In this document: one piece after another, positions 10,047-48,991 of the stretch
Layout: every line of letters begins with the position of its first letter
Numbering within the stretch: the first letter of the stretch is position 1
IMG/VR virus record: IMGVR_UViG_3300037502_003770
Span: 124,001 to 188,000 of that record
Reading direction: 5' to 3' (one strand)
Length of the DNA: 64,000 nt
Position numbers and translations under genes: made by a program
Notes under the pieces: generated by a model
What the model was told of the DNA's origin: nothing
Seen by the model: only the letters and a program-made list of their open reading frames with translations
The model's database searches: none

Positions 10047-10062
10047 ATATCTCTTTCAAAAG

Positions 10063-10103
10063 AAAATCCCTTTAACAAATAAAGGGATTTTTTATAATAT
10101 AAA
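10063..10103 (+). terminator. terminator hairpin with embedded class II promoter
   Basis: AAAATCCCTTT-aacaaat-AAAGGGATTTT; TTAACA at 10072, N17, TAATATAA. Confidence 0.7.
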
Positions 10104-10112
10104 TAATATATC

Positions 10113-23083: not shown

Positions 23084-24035
23084 TAAAACATTTATAACAT
23101 TCTTTTAAATAAAACAATGTTTCCAAAACATAAATAGTTAAATATCAAAGAGTTATGAAAAATAATGGTATGTAATAATCACAAAGATTGTTTATTGAAA
23201 AGAATGTTTATACAAAACATTCTTTACTTAATAAAAAGAATCTTCTTAATAAAAACATTGTTCCTGATGAAAACATTGTTTTTTTTTAACAGCACTTTTT
23301 TTTAATAAAACATTCTTTCTAATAAAAACATTCTTCCCTTATATATTACATACATTGTATATAAAACATTGTTCTTAATAAGTAATATATTCTATTACAA
23401 TTACTTATATATAATAAAATAAACTTTTCTTGAATAAAAAGTTGTTTTTATATAGTACTTTTTTTATTGAAACCTATTTTTTCTATAGCACTTTTTTTCT
23501 TTTATATTATAGTTTTTATCTAAAAAAGGTTATTTTACTTGAAAACCTAATTTTTTCTACAGTACTTTTTCTTTAAAGAAGATACTTTTTTAATAAAAGT
23601 TGTTTTTTTCTATAGTACTTTTTTTCTTTTAAAAAAGATTATTTTACTTGAAAACCTAATTTTTTCTATAGTACTTTTTTTCTTTAAGTAAGGTTATTTC
23701 TTTCAGAAGGGAAGCTGTTTATCCCCTCGCCCATCGAGACACTCTAATTTTTTGAAATAAGTTTTCTTAAAGAAGACTTTTTTTCAAAAAACATATATTT
23801 CTTTAAGAAAACTTATTTTTTTATACAGCACTTTTTTTCAGAAAGTAAGTTTTTTATACAGCACTTTTTTTCTAAAACATATTCTTTTTTAAAGGGATAA
23901 ATTTTTCTTAGTAATTATTTCTTTTACAAAGGTAAAACTTTTTTCTTTAAAAACAAAATATTTCTTTAAAGTTTTATTTTTTCCTACAGCACTTTTTTTC
24001 TAAAAGTAAGTTTTTTTCTATAGTACTTTTTTTCT
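23084..24035 (+). repeat. non-coding iteron-like array
   Basis: About 9 AAA(C/G)A(T/A)T(G/C)TT boxes (23084-23375) and 10 A(C/T)AG(C/T)ACTTTTT boxes (23289, 23452, 23485, 23559, 23612, 23668, 23825, 23858, 23986, 24020); ~55 bp duplication 23522/23631. Confidence 0.8.
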
Positions 24036-24236
24036 TTTACAAAGATAGATATAATTTTTATATATACAAAATATTTCTTTAAAAAATTTCTTACCTTATA
24101 TATAGGTATGTTATACCGCTATGTTCCTGATGCCTGAAAAAAAACTTAAAAAACTTTAAGAAAAATTTGGTGGTATGAAAAATTGCCTTTATCTTTGCAG
24201 TAGATAAACAACCCAATAACCTTAACCGCTACTAAT

Positions 24237-24917
24237 ATGGCAAGTGAACTTAAAAGAGTACTGCACAAAGAAAGTAAAATTTTGTTTGTTGCAACCTATT
24301 CTGAGGATGCAGAAAGTCCTCGCACAATGTATGACAACTTATGCACTATGTTATGTTTTCATAATAGGTATAATTTAGGTGATACTGATTCACTTTTAAG
24401 AAAAAAAGGTTTCAACTATGATAGTGATGATTATGATAGTTGGGAAGAGATGGAGAAAGCTATCATAAAGGAGAATGATATTGCAATAATATTGCCTTTA
24501 TGGTTATACGACCACAGTGGATTAACAATTTCTTTTGGTAGAACTTGCAGCTGGGATAGTGGACAGGTAGGTTTTATACTTGTTGATAAAGCAACTATAA
24601 GAAAAGAATATAGTTGTAAGAGAATAAGTAAGAAACTTTTACTTAAAGTAGAAGAAATTCTAAAAAATGAAGTAAAAGAGTACGATTCATATTTAAGAGG
24701 TGATGTATATGACCTTAACCAATATACAATTTCTGATGAATATATGTCAGAAATAGAATCTGAAAATATCGATATTGATGAAATAGATATTGATATGTTA
24801 GAAGAGGTTGAATCTTGTTCCAATTATATTGGAGAAAGTTGGTTAGATGATGCTATAAATAATAGTATATCTTATCTAAATAAAAAATATCTTTCTCAAA
24901 AAGCTGAAACAATTTAA
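24237..24917 (+). CDS. conserved-looking phage hypothetical protein
   Basis: LPLWLYDHSGLTIS...WDSGQVGFI...YDSYLRGDVY; promoter at 24166-24197. Confidence 0.8.
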   Translation: MASELKRVLHKESKILFVATYSEDAESPRTMYDNLCTMLCFHNRYNLGDTDSLLRKKGFNYDSDDYDSWEEMEKAIIKENDIAIILPLWLYDHSGLTISFGRTCSWDSGQVGFILVDKATIRKEYSCKRISKKLLLKVEEILKNEVKEYDSYLRGDVYDLNQYTISDEYMSEIESENIDIDEIDIDMLEEVESCSNYIGESWLDDAINNSISYLNKKYLSQKAETI

Positions 24918-24938
24918 AATAGGGTTATATTGAACTTT

Positions 24939-25040
24939 AAAGCCTATCTTTTTTAAAGGTAGGTTTTTTTTCTTAAAGGTATTGTTTTATTCAGAAAAAA
25001 GGTTTATCTTTGTAATAAGTAAAACGAACTAATAACCTTT
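24939..25040 (+). repeat. terminator+promoter cassette repeat (related copies at 25446, 26222, 26386, 27317)
   Basis: AAAGCCTATCTTTTTTAAAGGTAGGTTTTT; TTATTCAGAAAAAAGGTTTATCTTTGTAATAAGTAAAACGAACTAATAACCTTT repeated at ~26393-26446. Confidence 0.8.
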
Positions 25041-25056
25041 AACCCTTAGAAAAGCT

Positions 25057-25416
25057 ATGTTAAACCATATAGGCGTAAGAGTAAAAAATTTGAGTGAACT
25101 TGTAGGTATATTTTTTACCACAGGTGAGCAGGTACAAAGTATTTCTAATACTTGTACTTTACATGATAATCATTTTTATCCTGATTCAAGGATTGAATTA
25201 TGGTTATACAGAACTTGCATAGCAAGGATAACAAAAGATGGTAAGTTATTTATTACTTATGGTGAGTATGGTAATAGTATGACTACTTCCAAAAGATTAA
25301 ATACTATTTTAAAAGATAGTAGTTTGAACTTGAGTAGAGAAAAAATTGCTCATTACACTAAATTGGCAAGGGAAAAAAAGCCTAATGAAGTGGAAATAAT
25401 AGAGTACAAAAAATAG
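25057..25416 (+). CDS. hypothetical protein
   Basis: Promoter-gene-terminator unit. Confidence 0.75.
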   Translation: MLNHIGVRVKNLSELVGIFFTTGEQVQSISNTCTLHDNHFYPDSRIELWLYRTCIARITKDGKLFITYGEYGNSMTTSKRLNTILKDSSLNLSREKIAHYTKLAREKKPNEVEIIEYKK

Positions 25417-25905
25417 TATTAATGATTGGGATTTTGGTTTATTTAAAGCCTACTTTTTTTAAAGGTAGGTTTTTTTCTTATATACTGATTCTTACTTAAC
25501 ATAATGAAAGCCTTTAGAATTGAATAAAAACTTTTATCCTGAAAGAAAGGTCGAATACTTAAAAATTTTACTTATTAAAAAAAGTTAAGTTTTTTGGTAA
25601 GAGTATTGTTTATTGAAAAAAATATGTTTATCTTTGTAATAAGTAAAGCAGTTCAAAAGAAAGAGCCTTTACCCAAGATTAAAACTTTTTTTCTTAAAGA
25701 AGTAGGATATATCAAAAATAGTCCTTATCTTTACAGAAAGAAAAGTACCACAAAGAAAGAGGCTTTCCTCAAGGAACAAAAAAACTTTAAAAATATTTCG
25801 CTTAAAGTTTGGAAGTATCAAAATAAAGTCTTAACTTTGTATAAGTAAAAACAATCAACCCAACCAATTTACCTTATGGTGTAGAGGCTAACCAAAATAC
25901 ATATT

Positions 25906-26157
25906 ATGAAAAAGTACACAATCGAGTTTTCAGTAACTTCAAAGAAGTTAAACACTACTTTAAATTCCGAGATGGAAATGCAAAGTAGTTCTGAAAATAT
26001 GGTACAAGCTTTTAAAGAAGCTACCATATTAGTAAATAAGTTAGCACCTATGTTTTCTGGTGAGGTCGAGTTCGATGTTACCAACGTGAAAATGAATAAG
26101 GTACATACTAAACCACGTAAAAGCAAAAATGAACCAGCAGCACCAGTAACCGCTTAA
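25906..26157 (+). CDS. hypothetical protein
   Basis: Promoter TAACTTTG at 25832; terminator at 26222. Confidence 0.7.
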   Translation: MKKYTIEFSVTSKKLNTTLNSEMEMQSSSENMVQAFKEATILVNKLAPMFSGEVEFDVTNVKMNKVHTKPRKSKNEPAAPVTA

Positions 26158-26453
26158 TATGTCCTGAGTACCTTGTAAACTACTCACTTCATATATACAA
26201 GTCAATAATATTTTACTTTCAAAAAACCTATCTTTCTTTAAGGATAGGTTTTTTCTTATATAATTAATTTTATCCTGATACCTTACTTAACATAATGAAA
26301 GCCTTTAGAATTGAATAGATTTTTATTAGTAGGATATTTCCTTGAATAAAGAAATTTTATATAAGGAAAAAATATTTTCAGAAAGTTATTGTTTATTCAG
26401 AAAAAAGGTTTATCTTTGTAATAAGTAAAACGAACTAATAACCTTTAGAAAAT

Positions 26454-26687
26454 ATGAGAAAAAACTCAACCCTTAGCAGAATAATTACTAAAGTAAATTG
26501 TTTTTATGGTGCACCTATGGGAAGGCAAAATGTAGGTAATTTACCTGATAATAAAACTATCTTTGATTGTAAAGTACCTATGAATGGTGCTTATGACGTT
26601 GGTGGCGTTTATTGGGGTTTAGGTTCTGAATTAAGGGTGTCTTATACAAAAGATTTAACCTTTATACATTTTTACAGAAAAGAATAA
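26454..26687 (+). CDS. hypothetical protein, Gly-rich
   Basis: YGAPMGR...GAYDVGGVYWGLG. Confidence 0.75.
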   Translation: MRKNSTLSRIITKVNCFYGAPMGRQNVGNLPDNKTIFDCKVPMNGAYDVGGVYWGLGSELRVSYTKDLTFIHFYRKE

Positions 26688-26771
26688 AAATATTTCCTTA
26701 AAGATTAGGTTTATTCAAAAAAATACCTTATCTTTACAGTAAGTTAAAACCTCAAAAAACCCTTATTCCTT

Positions 26772-26939
26772 ATGAAAAAATTCCTTTCCATTATCCTGAT
26801 TGCAGTTGTACTTTCAAGTTGTGCAACTTATCAATATCAACAACCTTGCCCACCTACCTATAAAGGTACGAGCAAAAAACGTACTAAATATATTAGTACT
26901 GAAAAGAATTGTTTAACCTATAAAAGAAATTCTAACTAA
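26772..26939 (+). CDS. small lipoprotein (55 aa, not in track)
   Basis: MKKFLSIILIAVVLSSC: signal peptide II with LSSC lipobox. Confidence 0.75.
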   Translation: MKKFLSIILIAVVLSSCATYQYQQPCPPTYKGTSKKRTKYISTEKNCLTYKRNSN

Positions 26940-26940
26940 T

Positions 26941-27273
26941 ATGAGAAAGTTCTTGCAAAATTGTTATTACAATATAGGTGGAATTATCCTTTCAAAAGGT
27001 GTTTCTATCTTAAATAAGATTCCTTTTTTTAAGAAAAGAGTTTCTTATATGGTTAAGCAAACAATAGTAGCTATCATATTTGATAATATGGTGTTACTTG
27101 TTAGTACAATAATATTTATTAGAATAACTAATTTGATAGTTTCTAATAATATTGTTAGTCAATATGCTGAATATGTTATATTGTCTTTAATGGTAATATA
27201 TTTTGTACCTGCAATGTATATACTTTGGAGACGTATGGAAAGGCATAGATTAGCATCAAAAGAACTAGAATAG
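26941..27273 (+). CDS. membrane protein
   Basis: Two hydrophobic segments. Confidence 0.7.
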   Translation: MRKFLQNCYYNIGGIILSKGVSILNKIPFFKKRVSYMVKQTIVAIIFDNMVLLVSTIIFIRITNLIVSNNIVSQYAEYVILSLMVIYFVPAMYILWRRMERHRLASKELE

Positions 27274-27450
27274 AATTAAGGTATTTGGTTAAATTTGGTT
27301 TAAGTAAAACGTTATTAAAGCCTATCTTTTTTAAAGGTAGGTTTTTTCTTATATAAAATTTTTTTTCTTAAAGGTATTGTTTTATTCAGAAATTATGTTT
27401 ACCTTTACACTAGGTAATTAAACCAATAACCTTTAACCCTTTGGCAGTCT

Positions 27451-27903
27451 ATGAATACAGAAGTGGCAACCCTAACCAACAAAGAACGTATCAAAAAACA
27501 TTTCTTTCAGATAATGAAGGATGTAAAATTTGTAAATACTTCTGATAATTTTTTAGAAGTATTAAACAATTATGATACAGTAGATATTGAAGAAATATCA
27601 AAAAAGTTATTAAAAGAATTATCAAAAGTTAGTGATTTTCTAAGAAAAGAGAATATACATTTATTAGATTATGATATAAGTTTAAAAATTTATGAACTAA
27701 TAATTCAACATTCGTTAGTTTATTGTATTTTAAGAGAAAGTATATATCTTGACGTTTCAATTGCTAGATATTTTGCTAGTATTGCTAGATTAAATTATAG
27801 AAAAGAAAATAATTTAAGTGACACTTTTATTACTACTGAACAAACTAGAATAGAAGGTAAAGCTTATTTAGATGCAATTTCTAAATTTAAGTATAAAGAA
27901 TAA
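27451..27903 (+). CDS. hypothetical protein
   Basis: Promoter-gene-terminator unit. Confidence 0.75.
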   Translation: MNTEVATLTNKERIKKHFFQIMKDVKFVNTSDNFLEVLNNYDTVDIEEISKKLLKELSKVSDFLRKENIHLLDYDISLKIYELIIQHSLVYCILRESIYLDVSIARYFASIARLNYRKENNLSDTFITTEQTRIEGKAYLDAISKFKYKE

Positions 27904-27984
27904 CCTAGAAGAATCTTTTATTTGAGAAAAACCTATTTCTTTTAGAAGTAGGTTTTTTTGTATATGAGAATTTTTCTATTATAT

Positions 27985-28510
27985 GAAAAAAAGTGCTGTT
28001 GAAAAAAATAGAATTTTATTAAATAAAACAATCTTTTTAATAAAACATTGTCTCAAATAAAAGAATCTTTATCTTAAAAGAATGTTTTTATAAAGAATGT
28101 TTATATATTTTAAGAGAAAATCTTCTTTTATTAGAAAAAAGTACCGTTGTAAATGGAGTTTCTTTTAGAAACTACAATACAAAAAGTATAATATTCAAAA
28201 AAAGTGCTGTACTAAAAATAGAATTTTACTTAAAAAGATACCAATTTTCAAAAAAAGTGCTATACAAAAAGTATAATTATATCATAATGTATGTATATAT
28301 TTTAATAAAAAAGAGTTTTATTAAAAAAAAGTACAGTACTAAAAATAGAAAATTCTTATATAATGGAATATTTTGCTATACAAAAAGTGTAAAATTAAAA
28401 AAAGTACTGTAGTATTTTTTACTTTTAAAGAATTTTAGTCCAATATAAGAGAAAAATTCCCTTATTAGAGAATAGTTTTTCTTTAATAAGAGAATTTTTT
28501 TGCTGTAGTA
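27985..28510 (-). repeat. second iteron-like array, inverted relative to the 23.3-24.0 kb array
   Basis: AAAAAAGT(G/A)C(T/C/A)(G/A)T at ~27987, 28135, 28198, 28251, 28325, 28398, plus AAA(C/G)A(A/T)T(C/G)T boxes at 28025-28102. Confidence 0.7.
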
Positions 28511-28766
28511 TTTTTCTATATGAGAATTTTTTTCTTATGGTAGATTTTTTTTCTCAAAAAGTATTTTCTCATTTAGTAGAATTTTTCTCCTATTGTATAT
28601 TTCTTATTGTAGAAAAGAGGTTTTCTCAAAAAGTAGTATCATTTCTAGCAAAGTATATCATTTCTTTGAGAAAAAAATAATTAAAAAAAAGTTTGGATAT
28701 ATGAAAAATAGATGTTTACTTTGTCTTGTTATTGCAATGGTGCTTTAACATTAACCCTTAAACCGT

Positions 28767-37236: not shown

Positions 37237-40200
37237 ATGAAAGATATTAATGTAATAAATGATAATAATAAGATAGATTTAAGTTCTTTGAATAAATTTC
37301 TTATTAGTAAAGGTGATGAGTATTTAGAATATTTATTAATTAGTAATGTTTATAATAAAAATATTACAGAAGACAAAATTAGAGAATATGTTTTAAAAGG
37401 TTATAATATTAAAGAAGAATTATTAAAGTTTGTTACAAAAGATAAAGAATTATATTCATATATTAGTTTAATGAATAAAGTACTTGAAGAAATATATAAA
37501 GAAAATTCAAGCGAAGAAGATACTGAGTTTTATATATTACCTTTAGATTTTATTAAAAGTAATAAATATTTTTCAATAGATAAATTTTTTAGTGTATATG
37601 GTGGGTATGCTATTAGATTTATACCATATGAATTACAAACAAAAGAATTATGGGAATTTTCAGCTTTAAAATCACCTTATTTTATAAGTGATGATAGTTT
37701 TCCTCAAGAGTATAAAAGTTATAATTTATTTTTAAAATTAATTGAGATTGAATCATCTCTTATTTATGATGCAGCTGATAGTAATATTTTTAATAAAGAT
37801 GAGATTTATAATTTATTCGAGTTTACATACAAAAAATATATTAAAGAAAATAATGTATCTGAATTTTGGAAAACACATAGATATAACCCATTAGATTTTA
37901 AAGATATATATCTTAAATTAGCAAGTAATTTTAAACATGAATCATATTTAAAAAAATATGGGATTCCTGATATTCATGATGTACCTAGATTTGCATTTAA
38001 TGAAAGTAAGTCTTTATTAAAAGAAGAAACTTTATTGGATAAATTTAAATTAATGGATGAAAATAAGATTGATTTATTTTCTTTAAATAAATTTCTTCTT
38101 TCAAAAGAAGATAATTTATTAGAATATTTATTATTAGAGAATAATTTAATTTTTGGTTTAGATGAAAATAAAATTAGAAACTTTATATTAAAAGGTTATA
38201 AACCGTTAGAAACATTTCCTAATAATATAAAAATTGATATGGATTTAAAGGAGTATGTTAATGTATTATTAACTTTTGAATCTATTAAATATATTCCTAA
38301 TGAGAAATATACTGTTTCGTATGCTAAATTAAAAGATAATAAATATATTTCAATAGAAGGTCTTTTAAAATATAATTCTTTATTTATTAGGTATATCCCT
38401 GAAAATTTATTAACACAAGAAATATGTAATAATGTATATAATAAAAATTACAGAATTTTTAGAGAAATTCCAAATAGGTTTAAAACATATGAAATGTGTG
38501 AAAATGTTATAGGTAAAAACGCATATTTTTTTGTTTATTTACCTGACCCTTTGGATAATGGTACTTTAATTACGGTTCAGGAATGTTATAAATTATTAAA
38601 ACTTGCTCATACTTATTATATTGATAAAGATAAATTTTCAAATGGTGTTGAACAATTTTGGAGTGATGCTATTGTTTCAAAATTAGATAGAGATTATTTT
38701 GTTAGATTAATGTATGAAGTAAATGCACAAGAATATGTAGGAAAATACGGTCAGGGTGGTATTAAGAAAAATAATAATCTTCAAGAAAGTAACTCTTTAT
38801 TAAAGGAAGAAGAATTCTTTAATGTAGAACAACTAGAATATGATTCAGATAAAAATAAAATAGATTTACAAGAATTAAGTGAATTTTTATATAATAACGG
38901 AGATGATTATTTAGAATATTTATTAGCCAATAAAGAATATATTAAAGTTGATAGTAAAAATGTTTTTAGATTATATAAAAATAAAAATTTTAAAGATGTA
39001 ACTGAATTTTTAAATATTGGTTATGATTTTTTAAATGTAATATTAACTGACCCTATTGAAAAAAACAAAATAGAACAATTTTATTTAAAAAACCGATACC
39101 CTCATGATTATCCAGATATTTTATGGGAAAGTCGTGCATTTTGTGAGGCTGCTTTAATTAAACAAAAGAGTTGTTTATATAAAGTACCACTTAAATTTAG
39201 AGATTATAAAATGTGTAAGCTTGCTGTTAGTTTTGATGGTGATAATATAAAAAGTGTACCTGAAAATATTGAGAATTATTATTCTCTTTGTGAAATGGCT
39301 GTTTCTCAAAGGGCTTGGTCTTTGATGTTAATTGATAAGAATAAATGGGATTATAATTTATATGAAAAAGCTGTTTCTCAGAATGGTGGTGTTTTATTTT
39401 ATATACCTGAAAAATATAGAGACTATAATTTATGTGAAAAAGCTGTATCTAGTGAACCTAGTTCAATATATGATGTACCTAAAAATATTGAGAATTACTA
39501 TTCTTTAATAAAACTTGCTTACTCAAAGGATAAAACAGTTATATTAGATATGAATTTACCAAAAGAGTATTTTGATAAATTAAAAAATGATTTTCCTAAA
39601 GACTTTAATCTTCAAGAAAGTAAGTCTTTGTTAAAGGAAGGAATTACTGATGAGGTATATCATTTTACAACATATCAATCAGCTGCTGAAATATTACAAT
39701 ATAATAGATTTAAATTTTCTATTGAGACTGAAGGTGATTCTTTATCAAGGATGAATAATTACAAAAATTATATGTCTGTAAGTAGGACTAAGTCTTTAAA
39801 TAAAGGTTTTTTTAATACAATAAAGAATGGTGTTAATTTAGTTATTAGATTTAAACTTGATGGTAGAAAATTAGCTCAAAAATATAAAGGTATTCCATTT
39901 AATTATTTCCCTGCTTGGGGTAAAGAAAATTATGCTTTTGAATATGAGGATAGATTGCTTTCAAATGATGAATATATTGAAAATTTTTCAAAATATCTTT
40001 TATCTGTAGATATTATTGATTTAACTATTGGAAATAATATAAATAAAACAAAAATCCATACAATAAAAGAATTATCTCAAAAATTAAATCTTGTTTGCAA
40101 TGTTTATAAACATGATGATAATAATATTGTAAGAAAACAATTTCAATCCGACCCGATTAATTTTATTAAAAATAAAGGAACTTTTGTTTTAAATGATTCT

Positions 40201-42216
40201 TTTTTTACAAAAGAAATTGTTGATGAAATATATAATCATTTTAAAGAAAATATTTATACATATATTCGTTTATCTCAAATACCAGCTGAATTTAGAAATT
40301 ATGAGCTTTGTGAATTATATATAAAAAAGAACCCTATTAATATTATAGGAGTACCTTCACCAAATAATACTTTAATAAAAAACAATTTAATATCAAGAGA
40401 AGAATATATGTCTTTGGTAAGGATAGCTTTTTCTTTAGATAAAAATATAATAGATTATATCCCAGATGAATTTGAGAAAATATTAAGAGATGAAATTAAT
40501 AAAGCAAGTAATAATAATCTTCAAGAAAGTAAATCTTTATTAAAGGAAGGTATTACTGATGAGGTGTATCATTTTACAAGTTTAGAAAATTTTATTAAAA
40601 TAATGAATACAAATACATTTAGATTTTCAGATTTATTATATGATTTAAGTGATGTTATTCATAATACACCTTTAAAAAAATATAAATATTATATGTCTTT
40701 AAGTAGGACTGGTTCAATAAAAACAGGTTATGGTAACTATCAAAGTGATAATAGTAATTTTATTGTTAGATTAAAAATAGATGGTAGAAAACTTTCGCAA
40801 AGTTATAAAGGTCAACCAATAAATTATCATAATTATGGTAGAAAACAAAAATCTAGTAAAAAAACTAGTTTTAGATTTGAATATGAGGATAGAATATTAT
40901 CCAATAAACCAACTATTGAGAATTTTTCAAATTATGTTTTAAGTGTTGATATTATTAAAATTACTAATTCATCTAATAATTTTTTATTAGATGATGATAT
41001 GAAATCATTAGAATATATATTAAAAAATAAAGAAAATTATAACGCACCAATAAATTTCACAAATGAAAAAAATTCACCTCTTAATGAAAATAAATCTTTA
41101 TTAAAGGAAGGTATTACTGATGAGGTGTATCATTTTACAAGTTTAGAGAATTTAATTAGAATATTAAAAAGTAATTCTTTAAATTTAAGTTTTATGGATA
41201 ATGATATTAATCAGACTTGGAATAGGAAAGATAGCAATATACATAAAACTTTAAATAAATATATGTATTTTTTATCATTAAGTAGAACAAAGAGTATTGA
41301 TAAAGGTTATGCTCAAGTATTAAAATCACAAAATATACCTGTCATTACCAGAATTAAACTTGATGGTAGAAAACTTTCTTTTAATAATAAAATTATACCT
41401 TTTGATTATAATCAAACTATTAGCCGAAATGTTAATAAAAATGATAAATATTTTGAATACGAAGATAGATTAGTTAGTGATAAATCTTCAATTAAAAATA
41501 TAAATAATTATATTTTAGAGATTGATATTTTTATGTATTATAATTATGATTTTCAAAAAGATAGTTTTTTATTCTTAAAAGAATATCAAAATACCACAAA
41601 TATACCGATAAAAGTTTTTAATAAAGTAAAAAATAATTCTTTAAATGAAAGTAAATTATTATTAAAGGAAGATTATACAGAGGAAGAAGTTTTAGAAGAA
41701 ATAAGTGATAAAAATAAAATAGATTTAATTTCTTTAAATAAATTTCTAAAAGAAAATAATGATGATTATTTAGAATATTTATTATTTTATAATGATTTTT
41801 TAAATATAGAAAGAAATATTATAAAAATAGTAAAAAATAAATACATTACAGGTTTTGGTAGTTTCCCAATAAAATATTTATATCAACCAAAAGTAATAAG
41901 AGAAATAGTATTAAGAAATCCTGAATTATTAGAAAGATTGAATTTATATTACTTAGAAAGAATGGAAGATAGTAAACAGGAAATGAAAGATATTTACAAA
42001 TACGCTGTAATAAATAAACCAAATATGTTATCACGTATACCAACTAATCTACCTTATTATGATGAACTGCTTGAGGTGATGTTTCAAAAAGATAGAGGTA
42101 ACTTATTTGATTTATTAATTATTCAACCAAAATCTATTCAACAAAGTAATATGTTAAATAAAGTAATATCTTTTTTACAAAATAAAGGTTATACTTTAGG
42201 AAAAAATCCTTCTTAA
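37237..42216 (+). CDS. 1659 aa seven-module polyprotein (4 DUF4116-family-type modules and 3 ART-like modules)
   Basis: Six (L/F)(Q/N)E(S/N)(K/N)(S/L)LLKE linkers at 37996, 38779, 39610, 40519, 41080, 41641. Confidence 0.75.
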   Translation: MKDINVINDNNKIDLSSLNKFLISKGDEYLEYLLISNVYNKNITEDKIREYVLKGYNIKEELLKFVTKDKELYSYISLMNKVLEEIYKENSSEEDTEFYILPLDFIKSNKYFSIDKFFSVYGGYAIRFIPYELQTKELWEFSALKSPYFISDDSFPQEYKSYNLFLKLIEIESSLIYDAADSNIFNKDEIYNLFEFTYKKYIKENNVSEFWKTHRYNPLDFKDIYLKLASNFKHESYLKKYGIPDIHDVPRFAFNESKSLLKEETLLDKFKLMDENKIDLFSLNKFLLSKEDNLLEYLLLENNLIFGLDENKIRNFILKGYKPLETFPNNIKIDMDLKEYVNVLLTFESIKYIPNEKYTVSYAKLKDNKYISIEGLLKYNSLFIRYIPENLLTQEICNNVYNKNYRIFREIPNRFKTYEMCENVIGKNAYFFVYLPDPLDNGTLITVQECYKLLKLAHTYYIDKDKFSNGVEQFWSDAIVSKLDRDYFVRLMYEVNAQEYVGKYGQGGIKKNNNLQESNSLLKEEEFFNVEQLEYDSDKNKIDLQELSEFLYNNGDDYLEYLLANKEYIKVDSKNVFRLYKNKNFKDVTEFLNIGYDFLNVILTDPIEKNKIEQFYLKNRYPHDYPDILWESRAFCEAALIKQKSCLYKVPLKFRDYKMCKLAVSFDGDNIKSVPENIENYYSLCEMAVSQRAWSLMLIDKNKWDYNLYEKAVSQNGGVLFYIPEKYRDYNLCEKAVSSEPSSIYDVPKNIENYYSLIKLAYSKDKTVILDMNLPKEYFDKLKNDFPKDFNLQESKSLLKEGITDEVYHFTTYQSAAEILQYNRFKFSIETEGDSLSRMNNYKNYMSVSRTKSLNKGFFNTIKNGVNLVIRFKLDGRKLAQKYKGIPFNYFPAWGKENYAFEYEDRLLSNDEYIENFSKYLLSVDIIDLTIGNNINKTKIHTIKELSQKLNLVCNVYKHDDNNIVRKQFQSDPINFIKNKGTFVLNDSFFTKEIVDEIYNHFKENIYTYIRLSQIPAEFRNYELCELYIKKNPINIIGVPSPNNTLIKNNLISREEYMSLVRIAFSLDKNIIDYIPDEFEKILRDEINKASNNNLQESKSLLKEGITDEVYHFTSLENFIKIMNTNTFRFSDLLYDLSDVIHNTPLKKYKYYMSLSRTGSIKTGYGNYQSDNSNFIVRLKIDGRKLSQSYKGQPINYHNYGRKQKSSKKTSFRFEYEDRILSNKPTIENFSNYVLSVDIIKITNSSNNFLLDDDMKSLEYILKNKENYNAPINFTNEKNSPLNENKSLLKEGITDEVYHFTSLENLIRILKSNSLNLSFMDNDINQTWNRKDSNIHKTLNKYMYFLSLSRTKSIDKGYAQVLKSQNIPVITRIKLDGRKLSFNNKIIPFDYNQTISRNVNKNDKYFEYEDRLVSDKSSIKNINNYILEIDIFMYYNYDFQKDSFLFLKEYQNTTNIPIKVFNKVKNNSLNESKLLLKEDYTEEEVLEEISDKNKIDLISLNKFLKENNDDYLEYLLFYNDFLNIERNIIKIVKNKYITGFGSFPIKYLYQPKVIREIVLRNPELLERLNLYYLERMEDSKQEMKDIYKYAVINKPNMLSRIPTNLPYYDELLEVMFQKDRGNLFDLLIIQPKSIQQSNMLNKVISFLQNKGYTLGKNPS

Positions 42217-43224: not shown

Positions 43225-45411
43225 TTATCTACGTTTAACTACATAATAAGTATTATTTTCAAATTCAAAATCACCTAAAATAGTTTCATAAGCTAATATA
43301 TCATGTGCGCTGTATTCATATATAGTATTACTTACTAATTCTGTAATATAATCACTATACTTAGAACTATTACCAGTAAAATCAATATATTGTATTAGAT
43401 TTGAATAGCCATATAATTCAGTTACATAATCATTTATTATATTAATCATTTTTCCTTGTAATACTTTTTCTTTTACTTTTTCTTTTAACAAATTTATATA
43501 GTCTTCATCTAATATATCAGAATTATTATTGTTATATGATAAATAAAAAGCAATAGGATATTTATATTTTTTTCTTTTACTATAAAGATAAAGGTTTAAT
43601 CGATAAATATAATTTGATAGATTATTACCTTTTGGTACAACAAGAATATTAGCTTTTTCAAAATAAAATGTACTCTTATATAATTTTTTTATTTTATCAC
43701 ATAATTCAATTATCTCAGAATTATTTTCTTTTTTAGCTATTGCTTTTACTGTATATAATAAATTTTTTATGAAAAAATCATTATTAGGTCCAGGTAGTCT
43801 TATTTCATAAAACATGTTTTCTTTTTGATTTAAATAAAATTCATTTTCTTTTTCATTATTATTTGAATAATTTAAATAATGTCTATTTAAAAGTTCGTAT
43901 AATTTATATGGTTTACTTTGATAATAATTTAAATATTCAAACGGAAAAATATTTCTATCTAATTCAAGAAATTCTGTATATTTTTTTAAATCATTAATAA
44001 AATTTTGTCTATTACCGTTATATAAATTTTTTATTATACCATTTATATTAAATATTTTTTCATTATAGAATATATCAGTAAATAAATTTAAATCATTAAA
44101 ACTATATTCTAAATTATCAATAATATACTGACGAATTTCATCTGAGTCAAAATTATCATTTATATTATCCTCATTCCATTCTAATTTATCTAAAAATTGG
44201 TTAATATATTTTTTATTTTCAGCAAAGTCATCATAATAAGAACCAAAATTATCACGATAGAAAGAATCATATAAACTATCATGTTCATATACTTCATATT
44301 TATCACCGTCATTATCTATATAAACATTAGGTTCTGGTTCATCTACGATTTTAACTCCTAGGAAATCAGCTAAAGCTTCTTCAAAAGTTTCACTTTCTAC
44401 TTCTAACCCATCTGGTGTTAAAAACTTAGCTTTTAAACCATTATCAAGATATGGTAAAGATAACCCTTTAACGGCTGTACCATGATATGTTTCAGTAGTA
44501 TTTGTTGTTACTTTAAAACCTAGATTATTATTAATATAATTTTTTATTAAGTCACTATCTAAAACACCGTAAGTTCTATCTAAATAAAATTCACCTTTTT
44601 CTTTATAAAGAGTTTCTATATAACGAATAATATTTCTACTTAAAGGTGTATAATTAACTTTATTACCAGCTTGGTCAATAAAAGGTTCATCATATATCAT
44701 ATAACAGACTTTCATATTTTTATCAAAAACATTATTAAGAAGTTTTTGATTATGTGAACCATTATATAAATTTTGACAACTATTAAAAAAACAACTTACT
44801 GACATATTTAATACGTCAATAGGTTTATCACTTATATAAATATAAGCTTTCTTTAATTTATTATTATTTACAATTAAAGTTAAATTTGTTATACCATTAA
44901 TAATACCGTTAATTGTTTTTTCTTCAGATTTTAAATCTTGTGAAGTATATGATAAATTAAAATTATTTTTTTCACAATGGGTTAAAAAATTATAAAGAGA
45001 TGTTTTATTATTAGATATCTCTAATGTTTGAAAATTCTTTATTAAATAATATTCTTTACTTAGTATTTTTCTAATTTCATCTACCATTAAATAATCATCT
45101 TCATCACTAACATTATGATTAATATTTTTTAAAACATTAATTTTTGTTAGATAATCAACCAATTCAGATTTAGCAAATTTAGTTTTACGCAATTGTTTAA
45201 TTATATTTTTACTATTCTGTTTAATAATCTGTTCTTTAATAACTGATAATAATTTTTGGTCAGTTATTTCTTTTTTAATATTAGGTATTATAGGATTTTT
45301 TTCAGGAACTTCTAAATCAAGAGCTTTATCACCATGTTTTACAGCTTTTTGCATGTATTGAGGTACTACATCTCTAAACTTTGCTTCATCTATATATTTT
45401 CTTTTCATCAT
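43225..45411 (-). CDS. large hypothetical protein
   Basis: 728 aa; DVLNMS..FFNSCQ..LDRTYG; no confident family. Confidence 0.75.
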   Translation of the reverse strand: MMKRKYIDEAKFRDVVPQYMQKAVKHGDKALDLEVPEKNPIIPNIKKEITDQKLLSVIKEQIIKQNSKNIIKQLRKTKFAKSELVDYLTKINVLKNINHNVSDEDDYLMVDEIRKILSKEYYLIKNFQTLEISNNKTSLYNFLTHCEKNNFNLSYTSQDLKSEEKTINGIINGITNLTLIVNNNKLKKAYIYISDKPIDVLNMSVSCFFNSCQNLYNGSHNQKLLNNVFDKNMKVCYMIYDEPFIDQAGNKVNYTPLSRNIIRYIETLYKEKGEFYLDRTYGVLDSDLIKNYINNNLGFKVTTNTTETYHGTAVKGLSLPYLDNGLKAKFLTPDGLEVESETFEEALADFLGVKIVDEPEPNVYIDNDGDKYEVYEHDSLYDSFYRDNFGSYYDDFAENKKYINQFLDKLEWNEDNINDNFDSDEIRQYIIDNLEYSFNDLNLFTDIFYNEKIFNINGIIKNLYNGNRQNFINDLKKYTEFLELDRNIFPFEYLNYYQSKPYKLYELLNRHYLNYSNNNEKENEFYLNQKENMFYEIRLPGPNNDFFIKNLLYTVKAIAKKENNSEIIELCDKIKKLYKSTFYFEKANILVVPKGNNLSNYIYRLNLYLYSKRKKYKYPIAFYLSYNNNNSDILDEDYINLLKEKVKEKVLQGKMINIINDYVTELYGYSNLIQYIDFTGNSSKYSDYITELVSNTIYEYSAHDILAYETILGDFEFENNTYYVVKRR

Positions 45412-46211
45412 TATTCAGGTTTATTAATATTATTTTTGATACTAAATAATTCTTGGTTATTAACACTATATTTATTAATAATTGAAGTTGGTGCTTTCAC
45501 TATTTGGAAATCTGATTTCTTAATAAGATAACCTCTTAAAACAACTTTAAATACTTTTACATAATATCTTTTTCCTTCAAGGTCATTTAATGTTCCATCG
45601 GAACTAACATCTTCAAGATTTAAAGGCATGTAATGACCGTTTACATTAATATATAATTGTCTTTCATTAAACTTATTTAAATAAAGTTCAACCATTTCAT
45701 TTACATCGGTTATAAAAGCTGATATTAATCTTATTTCATATTCAATATCTATTGGAGTTGGTTGAGTTATTTTATAATGAATATATGTTAACATATCATT
45801 TTCAATAACAGGCATTTTATAATAACTAAAAGCTTTTTTATTAGGAATATTAAATTTCTCTCCGTAGATAGTTCCTTTAAGAATATTGGTTCTTTCCATT
45901 GTTATAAATGGAGGAACAAGGTTTTTATTATCATCTTGCAAGTGCCAAGTTTTTTGAAATTCACCCCATCTTTCATTATTCATAAAAATTGTATCAACTT
46001 TAACTCTTTCATCATTTTCACTAAGAATTGATAATGATAAATCACCTTCATTTGTACAATTAAATACAGCAATATCCAAATCGGCAATATCAATACTTTG
46101 AGGTAAAAAAGTAGAGTTTTCATCTGTTTGATTTAACAGTTCTTCAACACGAACAATTCCAACATTTGTAGGGTATGTATTTCTTAAAGAAGTTTTTTTA
46201 GGTAGAGCCAT
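45411..46211 (-). CDS. tail completion / sheath terminator (T4 gp15-like)
   Basis: VPPFITMER and QPTPIDIEYEIRLISAFITDVNEMVE resemble gp15-family motifs; structural gene context. Confidence 0.55.
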   Translation of the reverse strand: MALPKKTSLRNTYPTNVGIVRVEELLNQTDENSTFLPQSIDIADLDIAVFNCTNEGDLSLSILSENDERVKVDTIFMNNERWGEFQKTWHLQDDNKNLVPPFITMERTNILKGTIYGEKFNIPNKKAFSYYKMPVIENDMLTYIHYKITQPTPIDIEYEIRLISAFITDVNEMVELYLNKFNERQLYINVNGHYMPLNLEDVSSDGTLNDLEGKRYYVKVFKVVLRGYLIKKSDFQIVKAPTSIINKYSVNNQELFSIKNNINKPE

Positions 46212-46965
46212 TTACTTTTCTTTTAAATAGTAATTCTTTTAAAAGTTTTTTTACCTCTCTTGAAATATATTCTCTTAAATTAAACTTCTCTTTTATTTGT
46301 TTTAATATCAAAGGGTCTTCTATATAGTAAATAAGGGTTTTATCATTAGAAACAACTATTTCCCAAAGGTGAAAATCTTGTAAATGTTTAGGTACATGAA
46401 ATATTGAATCAGAAAAACTTAAAACAGCTTTTTCACAAAGAGAGTAATCTATAATTTTTTTAGATACATATGGTAAACAACCATATTGAGACGTAACAGC
46501 TTTTTCACAAAGAGAGTAATAATTTTCAATATTATCAGGTACAAATTGTAAAGCTGTGCCATCTTGAGAAATAGCTTTCTCGCAAAGAGAATAATCTCTT
46601 AATTCTTCTGGCACAAATTCTAAAGCTGTTCCATTTGTAAAAACAGCTTTCTCACAAATAGAATAATCTCTTAAATGTTTAGATACAAATTCTAAAATCC
46701 AACCATTTTTAGAAACAGCTTTTTCACGAAAAGAATATATATTCCATAATTCTTTTGGTATACGTTTAATATCATCTTCTTCATTGCTGTATATTATACT
46801 TATATAATAATTTAGTAATCTTTTATTAGAAAGGTTTTTTTCTTTAAAACCATTTACTTGCAATAATATATCTATTAAATCATCTCCTTTCTCAAGTAAA
46901 AAATTATTTAAAGAAAGTAAATCTATTTTATGTTTATCACTTATATTTTCTAACTTATTATTCAT
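46198..46965 (-). CDS. DUF4116-like repeat protein with C-terminal tag
   Basis: 25 aa repeats VPEELRDYSLCEKAxxxGxALxF; tail LREYISREVKKLLKE. Confidence 0.8.
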   Translation of the reverse strand: MNNKLENISDKHKIDLLSLNNFLLEKGDDLIDILLQVNGFKEKNLSNKRLLNYYISIIYSNEEDDIKRIPKELWNIYSFREKAVSKNGWILEFVSKHLRDYSICEKAVFTNGTALEFVPEELRDYSLCEKAISQDGTALQFVPDNIENYYSLCEKAVTSQYGCLPYVSKKIIDYSLCEKAVLSFSDSIFHVPKHLQDFHLWEIVVSNDKTLIYYIEDPLILKQIKEKFNLREYISREVKKLLKELLFKRKVNGST

Positions 46966-47002
46966 TATAAAAAATTACTTTTCTTTTAAATAGTAATTCT
47001 TT
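46212..47002. repeat. 28 bp perfect direct repeat flanking gene 46198-46965
   Basis: TTACTTTTCTTTTAAATAGTAATTCTTT at 46212-46239 and 46975-47002. Confidence 0.85.
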
Positions 47003-47010
47003 ACTATTTA
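46987..47010. promoter_or_regulatory. divergent pair of putative late promoters (CTATTTA)
   Basis: TAAATAG at 46987 (minus) and CTATTTA at 47004 (plus); motif recurs before most late genes. Confidence 0.6.
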
Positions 47011-47025
47011 CAATAAACAATATTT

Positions 47026-47502
47026 ATGGAAATTTATTTCAAAATAAATTATGACAAAAATTTTGATTTTACTTTAGAAAATAAACAAGATAAAATGGAT
47101 TTCATAATAAGAAAAAACTCAACTTTACCAATATTAAGATTAGAACCAATTAGAGTTTTAGATTATAAAGATTTAGTTGAAAATATTGAGAACGCAGCTG
47201 TAACATTTTCTATGATTGATATAGAAAATGGTTCATATAGAATAGCAAATAAGGCTGGTTATATTGAAATAAATGAAAGAGATAATGATACAAAAGTTAA
47301 AACAGGTAATGGTGATATGAAACCTGATTTTTATATATGTTATAAATTTACTGAATTTGATACAAGAGTTAATGGAGTATTTAGAGGTGAATTTAAAATA
47401 GATTTTATTAAAGATAATTGTGTTAATTCTTTAATTGCTCCCATTAAAAATGATTTATATATTCATATATTAGATTCTATTACAAAAACAAGTTTTATTT
47501 AA
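47026..47502 (+). CDS. putative virion structural protein (Ig/BppU-like beta sandwich)
   Basis: FIIRKNSTLPILRLE...AAVTFSM...YKFTEFDT...GVFRGEFKIDF. Confidence 0.45.
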   Translation: MEIYFKINYDKNFDFTLENKQDKMDFIIRKNSTLPILRLEPIRVLDYKDLVENIENAAVTFSMIDIENGSYRIANKAGYIEINERDNDTKVKTGNGDMKPDFYICYKFTEFDTRVNGVFRGEFKIDFIKDNCVNSLIAPIKNDLYIHILDSITKTSFI

Positions 47503-47506
47503 GAAA

Positions 47507-48991
47507 ATGAAAATTAAAAATATAAAAAGAATTTTAAAGGAAGAAACCAAAGGTGAAAGATATTTGAATAGTAAACTATCTAATATGGGTCCTATGGGTA
47601 TATCAAGACAGATTAGTAATCTTGGTGGTTACGGTCAAATAGATACTTTAAAGAAAGCTGAAGAAGAATTTTATAAATTACATAGAGTAGAATTTAAATT
47701 AAATAATCAAAAATATGAGGGTTATTTTATTGTATATCCTCAAAGTGATAATACTCTTATTTTTTATGATGGTTTACCCTTTGCAAAAAAGAGAGATACG
47801 ATGTATACAGGCGGTGAATTAAATAAAGATAAATCTGTAATATTTACAGGTTCAAGAGTAGATTTACAACTTTTAAAAACATATCAAAACTTTCTAAAAA
47901 GATTTAATTTAAAAAGTATAGTGTTAAAAGGATTTCCTGATATTACTGAACAAATTAAAAAAAATATAATTGTTGATGTAAAATTATTTTTTGAACAATT
48001 ATATAATCTTTTTATTATAAAAAATGAATTTTATAAAGAAATAGATGATTTTATAAATATATTTACTCAATTAAAAAAATACCCAAAAAATAGTAGATTG
48101 AATCGTAATGTAATTGATAAATATACTAATTTTAGAAATAATTTTGTTAATAGTAATGTATTGGAAAATAATATATTTAATGTCTTTAATAGTTATAATG
48201 TTGATGAAGCTTTTAATACTAGTGATATATCTGGTTTGTATATATATTTTAATTTTATAAAAAATAATATCGAAGAAATAAGAAATTCATCATCACAAAT
48301 AATTAAATTTTTAGAAAATTTATCTAATAAAAATAGTACCAGAATTAGTCAACCGTTTATCAGTAGTGATAAATATGATGTTAGTTATATTGTTAACGTA
48401 AAAAATAATTTATTACCAGGTGTTAAATCAGAATTAAAAAATCAAATACTTGAATTTACCTATATTAGTGAAAACTTAATAGATAAATCTAACTATAAAA
48501 TGGGTAAATCTTTGGGTGTTATGAAAATTAATGGTATATCTTTGAATATGAGGGATAAAAATGATAAATATGAAATAATATTTGATGCTGAAAAAAGTAT
48601 TATTTCATTAACTATTAACGGTAATAAACAATCTGGTAGTGATAGGGATAATAGTCTTAAAAAAATATTAGATAATATTTTTATTCAAAAATTTAATGGT
48701 GAATTTAATTATATAAATACTAAATTAATAAATGATGCTATAAATAATAAAATGTATAATTTTAATTATATTGAAAATAATAATAGACATTATCGTTTAG
48801 GTAGGTCAGGCGCACCTTTTAAATTTGATATTCTTTTCTATAATGACTTAGATGGTACAATGTTTAAAGGTAAATTACCTAACATTAATATTATATCCTT
48901 ACAAATAAATGATTTTAAAATATTAAAAGAACAGACAACATATATAGATGAAATAAAAATAAATATTGAATTTATATCAACAAATAATTAA
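47507..48991 (+). CDS. hypothetical protein with N-terminal ILKEE tag
   Basis: MKIKNIKRILKEE. Confidence 0.7.
   Translation: MKIKNIKRILKEETKGERYLNSKLSNMGPMGISRQISNLGGYGQIDTLKKAEEEFYKLHRVEFKLNNQKYEGYFIVYPQSDNTLIFYDGLPFAKKRDTMYTGGELNKDKSVIFTGSRVDLQLLKTYQNFLKRFNLKSIVLKGFPDITEQIKKNIIVDVKLFFEQLYNLFIIKNEFYKEIDDFINIFTQLKKYPKNSRLNRNVIDKYTNFRNNFVNSNVLENNIFNVFNSYNVDEAFNTSDISGLYIYFNFIKNNIEEIRNSSSQIIKFLENLSNKNSTRISQPFISSDKYDVSYIVNVKNNLLPGVKSELKNQILEFTYISENLIDKSNYKMGKSLGVMKINGISLNMRDKNDKYEIIFDAEKSIISLTINGNKQSGSDRDNSLKKILDNIFIQKFNGEFNYINTKLINDAINNKMYNFNYIENNNRHYRLGRSGAPFKFDILFYNDLDGTMFKGKLPNINIISLQINDFKILKEQTTYIDEIKINIEFISTNN

What the first reader, a model, noticed from the sequence alone, without database searches (positions are those of the whole stretch)
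46212..47002. DUF4116-like gene flanked by a perfect 28 bp duplication of a late promoter
TTACTTTTCTTTTAAATAGTAATTCTTT occurs at 46212-46239 and 46975-47002 and contains the minus-strand CTATTTA. Deleting one copy plus the gene restores a simple promoter-to-tail-completion-gene junction. This looks like a target-site duplication or integration by recombination at the promoter, with no transposase or integrase in view, and suggests how the family spreads.
Basis: partly seen in the sequence, partly recalled or inferred. Interest (0 to 1): 0.65.

Follow-up and report, generated by a model that had tools for sequence, protein, structure and literature searches.

The report
Promoter-bounded swappable gene slot in phage
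In an uncultured 313-kb T4-like phage, a repeat-protein gene sits between two identical copies of a late-promoter-like sequence, and close relatives have this same spot empty or filled with a different family member, so the promoter copies appear to act as recombination handles for a plug-in gene cassette.

Summary
The 28-mer occurs exactly twice in the window and in the whole 312,694-bp virus record, at 46212-46239 and 46975-47002. It brackets a 255-aa DUF4116 ORF.

The repeat is not a target-site duplication. The copy next to the gp15-like tail gene is also the last nine codons of the DUF4116 ORF. It is homologous to the conserved 3' end of about 10 paralogues. That end carries CTATTTA in three different reading frames, so the DNA motif is conserved rather than the peptide.

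CTATTTA is rare genome-wide, yet 62 of 132 copies lie 8-45 nt upstream of start codons, including those of the Gp23 capsid and tail sheath genes.

Relatives show that the slot is exchangeable:
- One contig with about 91-95% identical flanks has no gene there and a single promoter copy.
- A second contig has the same empty geometry, but its DNA could not be read.
- Others carry two unrelated family members (about 40-44% aa identity) between flanks that are 96-98% identical to each other (85-92% to the window).

Best reading: homologous recombination at promoter copies. This is a late-promoter analogue of the T4 PeSL cassettes, in which the cassette supplies the promoter for the gene downstream. 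Promoter activity, the direction of each event and circular intermediates are inferred, not shown.

The parts
46975..47002 (-). Upstream copy (U) of the 28-mer. It is a late-promoter-like element that drives the DUF4116-family gene, with the CTATTTA core at 46987-46993. With the + strand core at 47004-47010 it forms a back-to-back divergent promoter pair.
   Evidence: The core lies 22 nt before the ATG at 46965, inside the 8-45 nt window seen for 62 sites.
46966..46974 (-). 9-nt T-rich leader between U and the cassette ATG. A similar T-rich stretch ending in TTTTTA or TTTA directly precedes the ATG of other family members.
   Evidence: leaders of the family genes at genome 7915, 161237 and 188157, and of the slot genes in L005 and L018.
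46198..46965 (-). DUF4116-family gene, 255 aa. It has a conserved N-terminal segment, four 24-aa (72-nt) repeats at 46443-46733, and a conserved C-terminal helix ending in KKLLKE plus a tail. The predicted fold is an all-alpha repeat.
   Evidence: (repeat family D14).
46212..46239 (-). Downstream copy (D) of the 28-mer. It encodes the last nine full codons of the cassette ORF and also places CTATTTA (46224-46230) 13 nt before the ATG of the gp15-like gene. An extra T (TTAC instead of TAC) shifts the tail from the canonical KEYYLKEK-stop to KELLFKRKVNGST-stop.
45411..46211 (-). 266-aa gene resembling T4 gp15 (tail sheath stabiliser / tail completion). It is the gene served by the D copy.
   Evidence: Atlas lead. 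Searches show homologues sitting in tail and baseplate neighbourhoods.
47004..47502 (+). Divergent late-promoter core (47004-47010) and the 158-aa gene it precedes (47026-47502). This is the fixed left-hand flank of the slot.

Best explanation
The two 28-mers are two copies of a family-specific version of this phage's late-promoter-like motif (consensus tA-CTATTTA-wAa.AAAa). They bound an exchangeable gene cassette made of a short leader, a DUF4116-family ORF and a promoter-bearing tail. The cassette sits in a slot between the divergent promoter of the 158-aa gene and the gp15-like tail gene.

The upstream copy drives the cassette. The downstream copy is written into the cassette's last codons and re-starts transcription for the gp15-like gene, so a cassette can be present, absent or swapped without silencing its neighbour.

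Cassettes are lost, gained and replaced by homologous recombination between promoter copies and flanking homology. This could occur within a genome or between co-infecting relatives, and it uses general recombination functions rather than a transposase or integrase. The genome encodes a RecA/UvsX-like protein.

The perfect 28/28 identity arose in one of two ways. Either the resident promoter was duplicated at the recombination joints, or short-patch gene conversion copied the upstream copy onto the downstream one. Either route also explains the one-base frameshift in the ORF tail.

Shown: the repeat, the family's 3'-end homology, the motif statistics, the empty allele and the alternative fillings. 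Inferred: promoter activity and late timing, the recombination pathway, the direction of each event, and any circular intermediate.
For: 1. Repeat: it is exact and unique in the genome.

2. Motif statistics. CTATTTA ranks 98th of 105 permutations of its own letters (132 copies). Yet 62 copies lie 8-45 nt upstream of ORF starts, most of them 15-25 nt. Extra conserved positions appear only at those positioned sites. The sites precede the Gp23 major capsid and tail sheath genes. Along the genome they are complementary to host-type promoter matches.

3. Family tails. Of 10 paralogues with the KLLKE end, 9 carry CTATTTA in the tail, in three reading frames: TAC TAT TTA, CTA TTT A and GCT ATT TAT. 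Homologues in other contigs show the YYL and LF tails that correspond to two of those frames. Of 15 family genes with a co-directional downstream ORF, 11 carry the motif in the tail or gap. Neither of the 2 that face a convergent gene does.

4. Empty allele. L017 is a 1,593-nt contig from a different study. Its flanks are 90.5% (gp15-like gene) and 94.7% (158-aa gene) identical to the window. It has one promoter copy and no cassette. That single copy reads K-E-Y-Y-L-K-E-K-stop, which is the family's 3'-end footprint. The contig carrying P0016 has a minus-strand ORF starting 51 nt upstream of the gp15-like gene, the same geometry, in the other clade.

5. Replacement. The slot genes of the window/L003, of L005 and of L018/L020 are only 40-44% identical, which is no closer than random paralogues, and they do not group together on a tree. 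L005 and L018 are about 98% identical in the flanks. Identity falls below 50% starting inside the upstream promoter and recovers about 100 nt into the gp15-like gene.

6. Enzymes. No Phage_integrase or Resolvase is present. A RecA-like ORF is present.

7. Precedent. PeSL-mediated shuffling and mini-circles in T4-type phages (PMC2839356, PMC4122927).
Against: No transcript data exist. No RNA run holds the locus, so promoter function and late timing rest on sequence statistics and on gene identities.

Only one empty allele is verified at the DNA level, from a single 6x contig.

The right-hand breakpoint between L005 and L018 lies about 100 nt inside the gp15-like gene, not at the promoter. That exchange could therefore be ordinary allelic recombination through the flanks. 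It says nothing about how a cassette first entered the slot.

The solo copy in L017 differs from a clean one-copy product of the window's alleles by two 1-nt indels and by TAC versus TTAC. No excision joint appeared in the source sample's contigs. No near-identical paralogues exist within the genome, so no recent intragenomic copying is visible.
Confidence: 0.67

Rival explanations
1. Target-site duplication: a transposable element carrying the DUF4116 gene inserted at the promoter and duplicated 28 bp of target DNA.
For: The gene is flanked by a perfect direct repeat, and one relative has the site empty with a single copy. The genome holds six TnpB (OrfB_IS605) genes, one of them in the window at 18228-19403.
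Against: The left copy is not target DNA. It is the family's own conserved 3' end, shared with about 10 paralogues elsewhere. The cassette contains no transposase and no second ORF that could encode one, and the repeat search run here covered direct repeats only, so terminal inverted repeats were not tested. The nearest TnpB lies 27 kb away. From general knowledge, IS200/IS605 elements make no target duplications, and 28 bp is far longer than usual duplications. In L005 the two copies differ by indels, which is unlike a duplication made at insertion, though not decisive after divergence.
Confidence: 0.04
2. No mobility: the gene is an old, vertically inherited resident. The two promoter copies look alike only because both must work as promoters, with occasional gene conversion between them. 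The differences among relatives reflect very fast divergence of a repeat protein plus one chance deletion.
For: All nearby relatives with 10 kb or more of context carry a DUF4116 gene at this position. Repeat number varies within one cassette type: L018 has 316 aa and L020 has 253 aa. The perfect repeat already existed before the window and L003 diverged.
Against: Slot genes of different clades are no closer to each other than to random paralogues. The L018/L020 gene groups with a paralogue found at another place in the window's genome, with support 100/96. Identity between L005 and L018 falls from about 98% to below 50% over a few bases inside the promoter, leader included. That is a recombination boundary, not gradual drift. 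Empty geometry is seen in both clades.
Confidence: 0.12
3. CTATTTA is not a promoter. It is another kind of signal, for example an RNA-processing or translation-coupling site, or the recognition or target-adjacent motif of a nuclease such as TnpB. The resulting breaks would stimulate recombination at these places.
For: No transcript data exist. All six TnpB genes sit directly behind a CTATTTA site. The family-type sites contain TTAC, which from memory is a known IS608 target; this is a lead only.
Against: The motif precedes about 60 ORFs of all kinds, including the capsid and sheath genes, at a fixed short distance, often as back-to-back divergent pairs in intergenic DNA. That is the pattern of a promoter. 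It has no nearby hairpin or terminator. Its distribution is complementary to host-type promoter matches. A nuclease role would add to the recombination model rather than replace it.
Confidence: 0.1
4. The empty-site contigs are assembly artefacts: a repeat collapsed, so no real genome lacks the cassette.
For: L017 is a single short contig at about 6x depth. Contigs of run X2 break at the inner edges of both repeats, at 46239 and 46980, which shows that assemblers struggle at this locus.
Against: By my understanding, Logan contigs are built with a k-mer of 31, longer than the 28-nt repeat; this was not checked here. L017's single copy has its own sequence (TAC, one extra A, one extra T). Both of its flanks are uniformly diverged from every other relative, as expected of one distinct lineage and not a chimera. 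No X4 contig covers a cassette at this locus. An independent assembly in the other clade shows the same geometry.
Confidence: 0.07

Closest known systems
PeSL (promoter-early stem-loop) mobile regulatory cassettes of T4-type phages (Arbiol et al. 2010, PMC2839356; Comeau et al. 2014, PMC4122927)
   Same: Short conserved regulatory sequences are repeated through a T4-like genome and flank non-essential genes. Insertions, deletions and replacements between close relatives have their boundaries at these sequences. Recombination is homologous and needs no dedicated recombinase. This phage is T4-like by its Gp23 capsid and gp15-like proteins. Its early region also holds terminator-plus-host-type-promoter repeats that look like true PeSLs.
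   Different: A PeSL is an intergenic early sigma-70-type promoter joined to a terminator hairpin, and it flanks unrelated ORFans in hyperplastic regions. Here the element is a late-type motif with no hairpin. It lies in the structural-gene module and serves one paralogous family. One copy is embedded in the coding tail of the cassette, so the cassette itself carries the promoter for the next gene. Mini-circles were demonstrated for PeSLs. None has been shown here.
Morons of lambdoid phages (own knowledge: Juhala, Hendrix and colleagues, 2000)
   Same: A moron is an extra gene inserted between two genes that are adjacent in relatives, and it brings its own transcription signal.
   Different: A moron carries a promoter for itself plus a terminator and is usually expressed from the prophage. 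This cassette borrows the resident promoter and donates a replacement to the downstream gene. It has no terminator and appears to be a late lytic gene.
T4 late promoters (TATAAATA, gp55/gp33-dependent; own knowledge)
   Same: A single short A+T-rich element with no -35 partner lies close upstream of structural genes in a T4-like phage. In T4 it often lies inside the end of the preceding gene.
   Different: The core sequence differs (CTATTTA plus an A-rich extension). No gp55 homologue was searched for, and no transcription data exist.
Integron gene cassettes
   Same: Promoterless or minimal ORF units are inserted at a fixed slot next to a promoter, and their content varies among relatives.
   Different: Integrons need an IntI tyrosine recombinase and attC/attI sites. 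No Phage_integrase or Resolvase domain is present in this genome, and the bounding sequence behaves as a general promoter motif.
IS200/IS605-TnpB elements
   Same: They are present in this genome in six copies and near the gp15-like gene in two distant relatives.
   Different: They lie 27 kb from the slot, carry no DUF4116 gene and, from general knowledge, make no target duplication.

Membership tests
Pfam DUF4116 (PF13475) repeat proteins | Match to the family profile above the curated gathering score | tested here: met
   E 3.8e-23, 81.2 bits against a cut-off of 24.9, in two stretches. Four 24-aa repeats are present (family D14). The predicted fold is all-alpha repeat, with mean pLDDT 69.
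PeSL-type mobile regulatory cassettes | A conserved regulatory motif repeated through the genome that flanks dispensable genes | tested here: met
   62 positioned CTATTTA sites exist, and family-type versions lie on both sides of family genes. The gene is dispensable, since an empty allele exists.
PeSL-type mobile regulatory cassettes | Composite of an early sigma-70-like promoter and a terminator stem-loop | tested here: not met
   There is no terminator-like hairpin and no excess of sigma-70-like sites in 45300-47600. The motif precedes capsid and sheath genes, so it is late-type.
PeSL-type mobile regulatory cassettes | Indel and replacement boundaries between close relatives coincide with the motif | tested here: met
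   The boundaries of the empty allele fall at the repeat. The left breakpoint between L005 and L018 lies inside the promoter. The right breakpoint lies about 100 nt beyond it.
PeSL-type mobile regulatory cassettes | Excised mini-circles formed by recombination between neighbouring copies | not testable with these tools
   Only contigs were available, not raw reads. No 46211-to-46975 joint appeared in the source sample's contigs, and contigs drop rare forms.
Transposon with target-site duplication | The repeat is duplicated target DNA lying outside the element, and the element has its own ends and a transposase | tested here: not met
   The left copy is the family's conserved coding 3' end. The 763-bp unit has no other ORF or transposase. 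No integrase or resolvase is in the genome. TnpB genes lie elsewhere.
Integron-like cassette system | A site-specific tyrosine recombinase and attC-type sites | tested here: not met
   There is no PF00589 match in the 312,694-bp record, while the control genomes all gave matches.
T4 gp15 (tail sheath stabiliser / completion), for the neighbouring 266-aa gene | Sequence or fold match to PF16724 T4-gp15_tss | tested here: inconclusive
   There is no direct Pfam or PHROG hit. The nearest Atlas clusters carry PF16724 in 15-17% of members, with score 0.94-0.95 and TM 0.71-0.79.

The most novel reading that the evidence does not exclude
A phage gene family has its exit promoter written into its own last codons, kept at the DNA level in three reading frames. 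Each member is therefore a self-contained, non-polar plug-in. A pool of such cassettes is exchanged among related jumbo T4-like phages by recombination at late-promoter copies, possibly through small excised circles (763 bp here). On this reading, late promoters double as the attachment sites of a recombinase-free cassette system within the structural-gene module.
Probability: 0.45. Interest if true: 0.72.

Novelty: new variant of a known kind. Interest (0 to 1): 0.6.

Why it matters
Shuffling at repeated regulatory sequences is known for early promoter-terminator units (PeSLs) in the hyperplastic regions of T4-type phages. Three points here go beyond that.

First, the same logic appears to operate at late promoters, inside the otherwise conserved tail-gene module.

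Second, the cassette family has merged the promoter with its coding end. Insertion or loss therefore never leaves the downstream essential gene without a promoter. This is a simple answer to how phages can add accessory genes among structural genes without polar damage.

Third, it offers a concrete natural test bed. One slot has at least four states (empty and three cassette types) in metagenomes from several studies. That makes rates and mechanisms of recombinase-free gene flux measurable.

It also yields a candidate late-promoter consensus for an uncultured, 22% G+C, 313-kb phage lineage.

Tried and rejected
- Blastn of 45000-48000 against 50,697 phage records found no match.
- The search for related loci found no relatives with the gp15-like protein in viral contigs, or with the family alignment in viral and metagenome contigs.
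- A degenerate pattern for further empty junctions found nothing in metagenome or viral contigs.
- The genome search could not reach the relatives' records, so other family slots could not be compared between genomes.
- No RNA run holds the locus, so transcript starts were not testable. The runs are kept as contigs, so rare excision joints and circles were not testable either.
- PHROGs gave only one unnamed family for the cassette and nothing for its neighbours.
- Foldseek of the AF2 model against the PDB gave no match at E <= 0.001, only generic designed helical, armadillo and TPR repeats. The cargo's function therefore stays open.
- Distant homologues of the gp15-like gene (35-45% aa identity) have a different gene order. 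They are not usable as empty-site alleles.
- I first read the slot gene as an old ortholog because all long relatives have a DUF4116 gene there. I rejected that after the tree and identity tables.
- I first took window versus L003 as 8% diverged. Locally the divergence is only 1-2%, so the persistence of the perfect repeat between them says little.

Full report
**Setting.** The window is bases 124001-188000 of a 312,694-bp IMG/VR virus record, estimated 96% complete, with 22% G+C. The phage is T4-like: it has a Gp23-family major capsid protein and a tail sheath. The 266-aa gene beside the finding resembles T4 gp15, the tail sheath stabiliser / completion protein, as an Atlas lead at score 0.95 and TM 0.71-0.79. 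The first half of the window is an early region. It holds small + strand genes behind repeated hairpin-plus-promoter units of the TTG...TAnnTTTG type. From memory, that is the Bacteroidota promoter form. The second half of the window holds structural genes.

**The observation.** The 28-mer is present exactly twice, at 46212-46239 and 46975-47002. No third copy exists with up to 3 mismatches in the window or in the whole genome. Between the copies lies a minus-strand ORF (46198-46965, 255 aa) with a clear DUF4116 match and four 24-aa repeats. The repeat period is 763 bp. Such repeats are not rare in this genome. It has 79 exact direct repeats of 20 nt or more within 3 kb, against none in Markov simulations. 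Among 8,646 pairs of CTATTTA sites, this pair is the fourth longest exact match.

**CTATTTA behaves like a late promoter.**
- The heptamer is depleted: 132 copies, rank 98 of 105 among permutations of its own letters.
- Yet 62 copies lie 8-45 nt upstream of an ORF start, most at 15-25 nt, often as back-to-back divergent pairs.
- Only these positioned copies share further conserved bases, giving tA-CTATTTA-wAa.AAAa.
- They precede the major capsid and tail sheath genes.
- They are scarce at 100-140 kb, where matches to the host-type promoter are frequent, and the next bin (140-160 kb) has the most host-type matches (14) but also 4 late sites, at the edge of the late module.
- No hairpin terminator or sigma-70-like excess accompanies them at the locus.
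- This is statistical evidence. No RNA run holds the locus.

**The left copy is part of the gene.** The genome has about 17 paralogues of the ORF. Each has a conserved N-terminal segment and a conserved C-terminal helix ending in ...EYISKEVKKLLKE, followed by a short tail. In 9 of the 10 members with that ending, the tail DNA contains CTATTTA 13-33 nt before the next gene's ATG. It appears in three reading frames: TAC TAT TTA (Tyr-Tyr-Leu, five members), CTA TTT A (Leu-Phe, three members) and GCT ATT TAT (one member). Homologues on other contigs show the YYL and LF tails that correspond to two of those frames.

So the DNA word is conserved, not the peptide. Of 15 family genes with a co-directional downstream ORF, 11 carry the motif in the tail or the gap. 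Neither of the two that face a convergent gene does.

Each family gene therefore appears to hand a promoter to whatever lies downstream. In the window's gene the tail has TTAC where most paralogues have TAC. This shifts the ending from KEYYLKEK-stop to KELLFKRKVNGST-stop and makes the ORF overlap the gp15-like gene by 14 nt. This excludes a target-site duplication in the usual sense, because the repeat is element DNA.

**Relatives.** The gp15-like protein has 11 database relatives. Their contigs give three clades by flank identity.

| Clade | Members | Flank identity to the window |
|---|---|---|
| A | window, L003, L004 | 98-99% locally |
| B | L017 | 90.5% (gp15-like gene), 94.7% (158-aa gene) |
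| C | L005/L006, L018, L020/L021, P0016 contig | 85-92% |

- **Clade A** carries the same 255-aa cassette. In L003/L004 the upstream copy has one mismatch.
- **L017** is a 1,593-nt contig from a wastewater metagenome of another study. It was first seen as a joint when contigs were laid on the window (X4 record 22) and was then fetched. It has no cassette. The 158-aa gene start, the divergent promoter, one family-type promoter copy and the gp15-like ATG follow each other within 52 nt. Its single copy reads K-E-Y-Y-L-K-E-K-stop, which is the footprint of a family 3' end.
- **The P0016 contig** (clade C) has a minus-strand ORF starting 51 nt upstream of the gp15-like gene, the same geometry.
- **Filled clade C alleles** hold other family members. 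L005 has a 210-aa type with the canonical KEYYLKEK-stop and two imperfect promoter copies. L018 (316 aa) and L020 (253 aa) hold a third type that differs between them in repeat number.

Across types the proteins are only 40-44% identical, no closer than random paralogues. On a tree the L018/L020 gene groups with a paralogue located elsewhere in the window's genome, with support 100/96. L005 and L018 are about 98% identical in both flanks. Identity falls below 50% starting inside the upstream promoter and recovers about 100 nt into the gp15-like gene.

Contigs of a further run (X2) end at 46239 and begin at 46980, the inner edges of the two repeats. This is expected where a population branches at that point, but it is weak evidence.

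**Mechanism.** The genome has no tyrosine or serine recombinase. The cassette holds no other ORF. The six TnpB genes lie elsewhere, the nearest 27 kb away. A RecA/UvsX-like ORF is present. The simplest account is general homologous recombination between promoter copies 20-28 nt long, and through the flanks between co-infecting relatives.

The closest precedent is PeSL-mediated shuffling in T4-type phages, where recombination between neighbouring promoter-terminator units also yields mini-circles (PMC2839356, PMC4122927).

The direction of each event is not settled. With midpoint rooting and the 52-55% identical outgroup P0003, filled and empty states occur in both major clades. Several events are therefore needed under any history.

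The perfect 28/28 identity could come from either of two routes:
- later conversion of the downstream copy by the upstream one.

Both routes explain the extra T and the shifted tail. The data do not separate them.

**Cargo.** The AF2 model is an all-alpha repeat (mean pLDDT 69) with a long C-terminal helix and no significant PDB match. Family members cluster in the tail and late module. Some are fused into very large proteins. A late-expressed protein-binding repeat protein, possibly virion-associated, is my best guess, and it is untested.

**Verdict.** The transposon reading is wrong. The reading of recombination at the promoter is largely upheld, and it extends to a family-wide design in which the cassette carries the next gene's promoter. 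This is a new variant of a known kind (PeSL-like shuffling). It is of moderate to good interest, and the remaining doubts can be settled with reads and transcript mapping.

Noticed in passing
window 23200-28600 (for example 24986-25041 = 26392-26447, 56 nt exact); also genome 118200/119356 (87 nt exact): The early region is full of repeated units made of a hairpin (AAAGCCTA...TAGGTTTTTT) followed by a host-type promoter (TTG...TAnnTTTG). They flank small ORFs. These look like true analogues of T4 PeSL cassettes.
   Followed up: partly
window 18228-19403 (+); genome 22209-23447, 62727-63953, 195915-197117, 216501-217736, 299232-300485: There are six TnpB (OrfB_IS605 / Cas12f1-like TNB) genes in one phage genome. 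Every one sits directly behind a positioned CTATTTA site. Two distant relatives also have TnpB within 2-4 kb of their gp15-like gene. Whether TnpB cutting feeds recombination at late promoters is open.
   Followed up: partly
window 37237-42216 (+): The 1,659-aa ORF is a chain of family modules fused in frame. The N-terminal motif (..NKIDLxSLNKFL..) recurs at residues 13, 278, 542 and 1495. Each later occurrence is preceded by ..SLLKE.. and a former start Met, as if the tail promoters and stops between tandem cassettes had decayed.
   Followed up: partly
genome 7952 and 10504 (outside the window; locus L026): A second perfect promoter repeat (21 nt, ATACTATTTAAAAGAAAAATA) brackets a two-gene unit. 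The unit is a 674-aa ORF plus the family gene 10001-10522.
   Followed up: no
genome 192084 (-) and 199851 (+) (outside the window; loci L027, L023): Two family-type promoters have no family gene attached. One shares 23 nt with the promoter of the 1,659-aa gene and is followed only by another promoter. The other reads ..LKEYYLK-stop in intergenic DNA. They are possible scars of lost cassettes.
   Followed up: no
L003:9943-12177 versus window about 42228: The close relative L003 has a 744-aa gene between the 324-aa gene and the large family gene. The window's genome lacks it entirely; no blastn match of 150 nt or more was found.
   Followed up: no
L018:5043-5993 versus L020:4370-5131: The same cassette type differs by about 190 nt of DUF4116 repeats (316 versus 253 aa) between relatives whose flanks are 99.5% identical. 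This is repeat-number variation inside the cargo.
   Followed up: partly
genome 69747-71057, 76259-77566, 86891-88204 (minus strand, outside the window): Three paralogous genes of about 436 aa share up to 43 nt of identical promoter plus leader. These are the longest promoter-centred matches in the genome. Their function was not examined.
   Followed up: no
window 46239 and 46980: In run X2 (an aquatic metagenome from another study) the flanking contigs stop at the inner edges of the two 28-mers. This is as expected if several slot states coexist in that sample.
   Followed up: no
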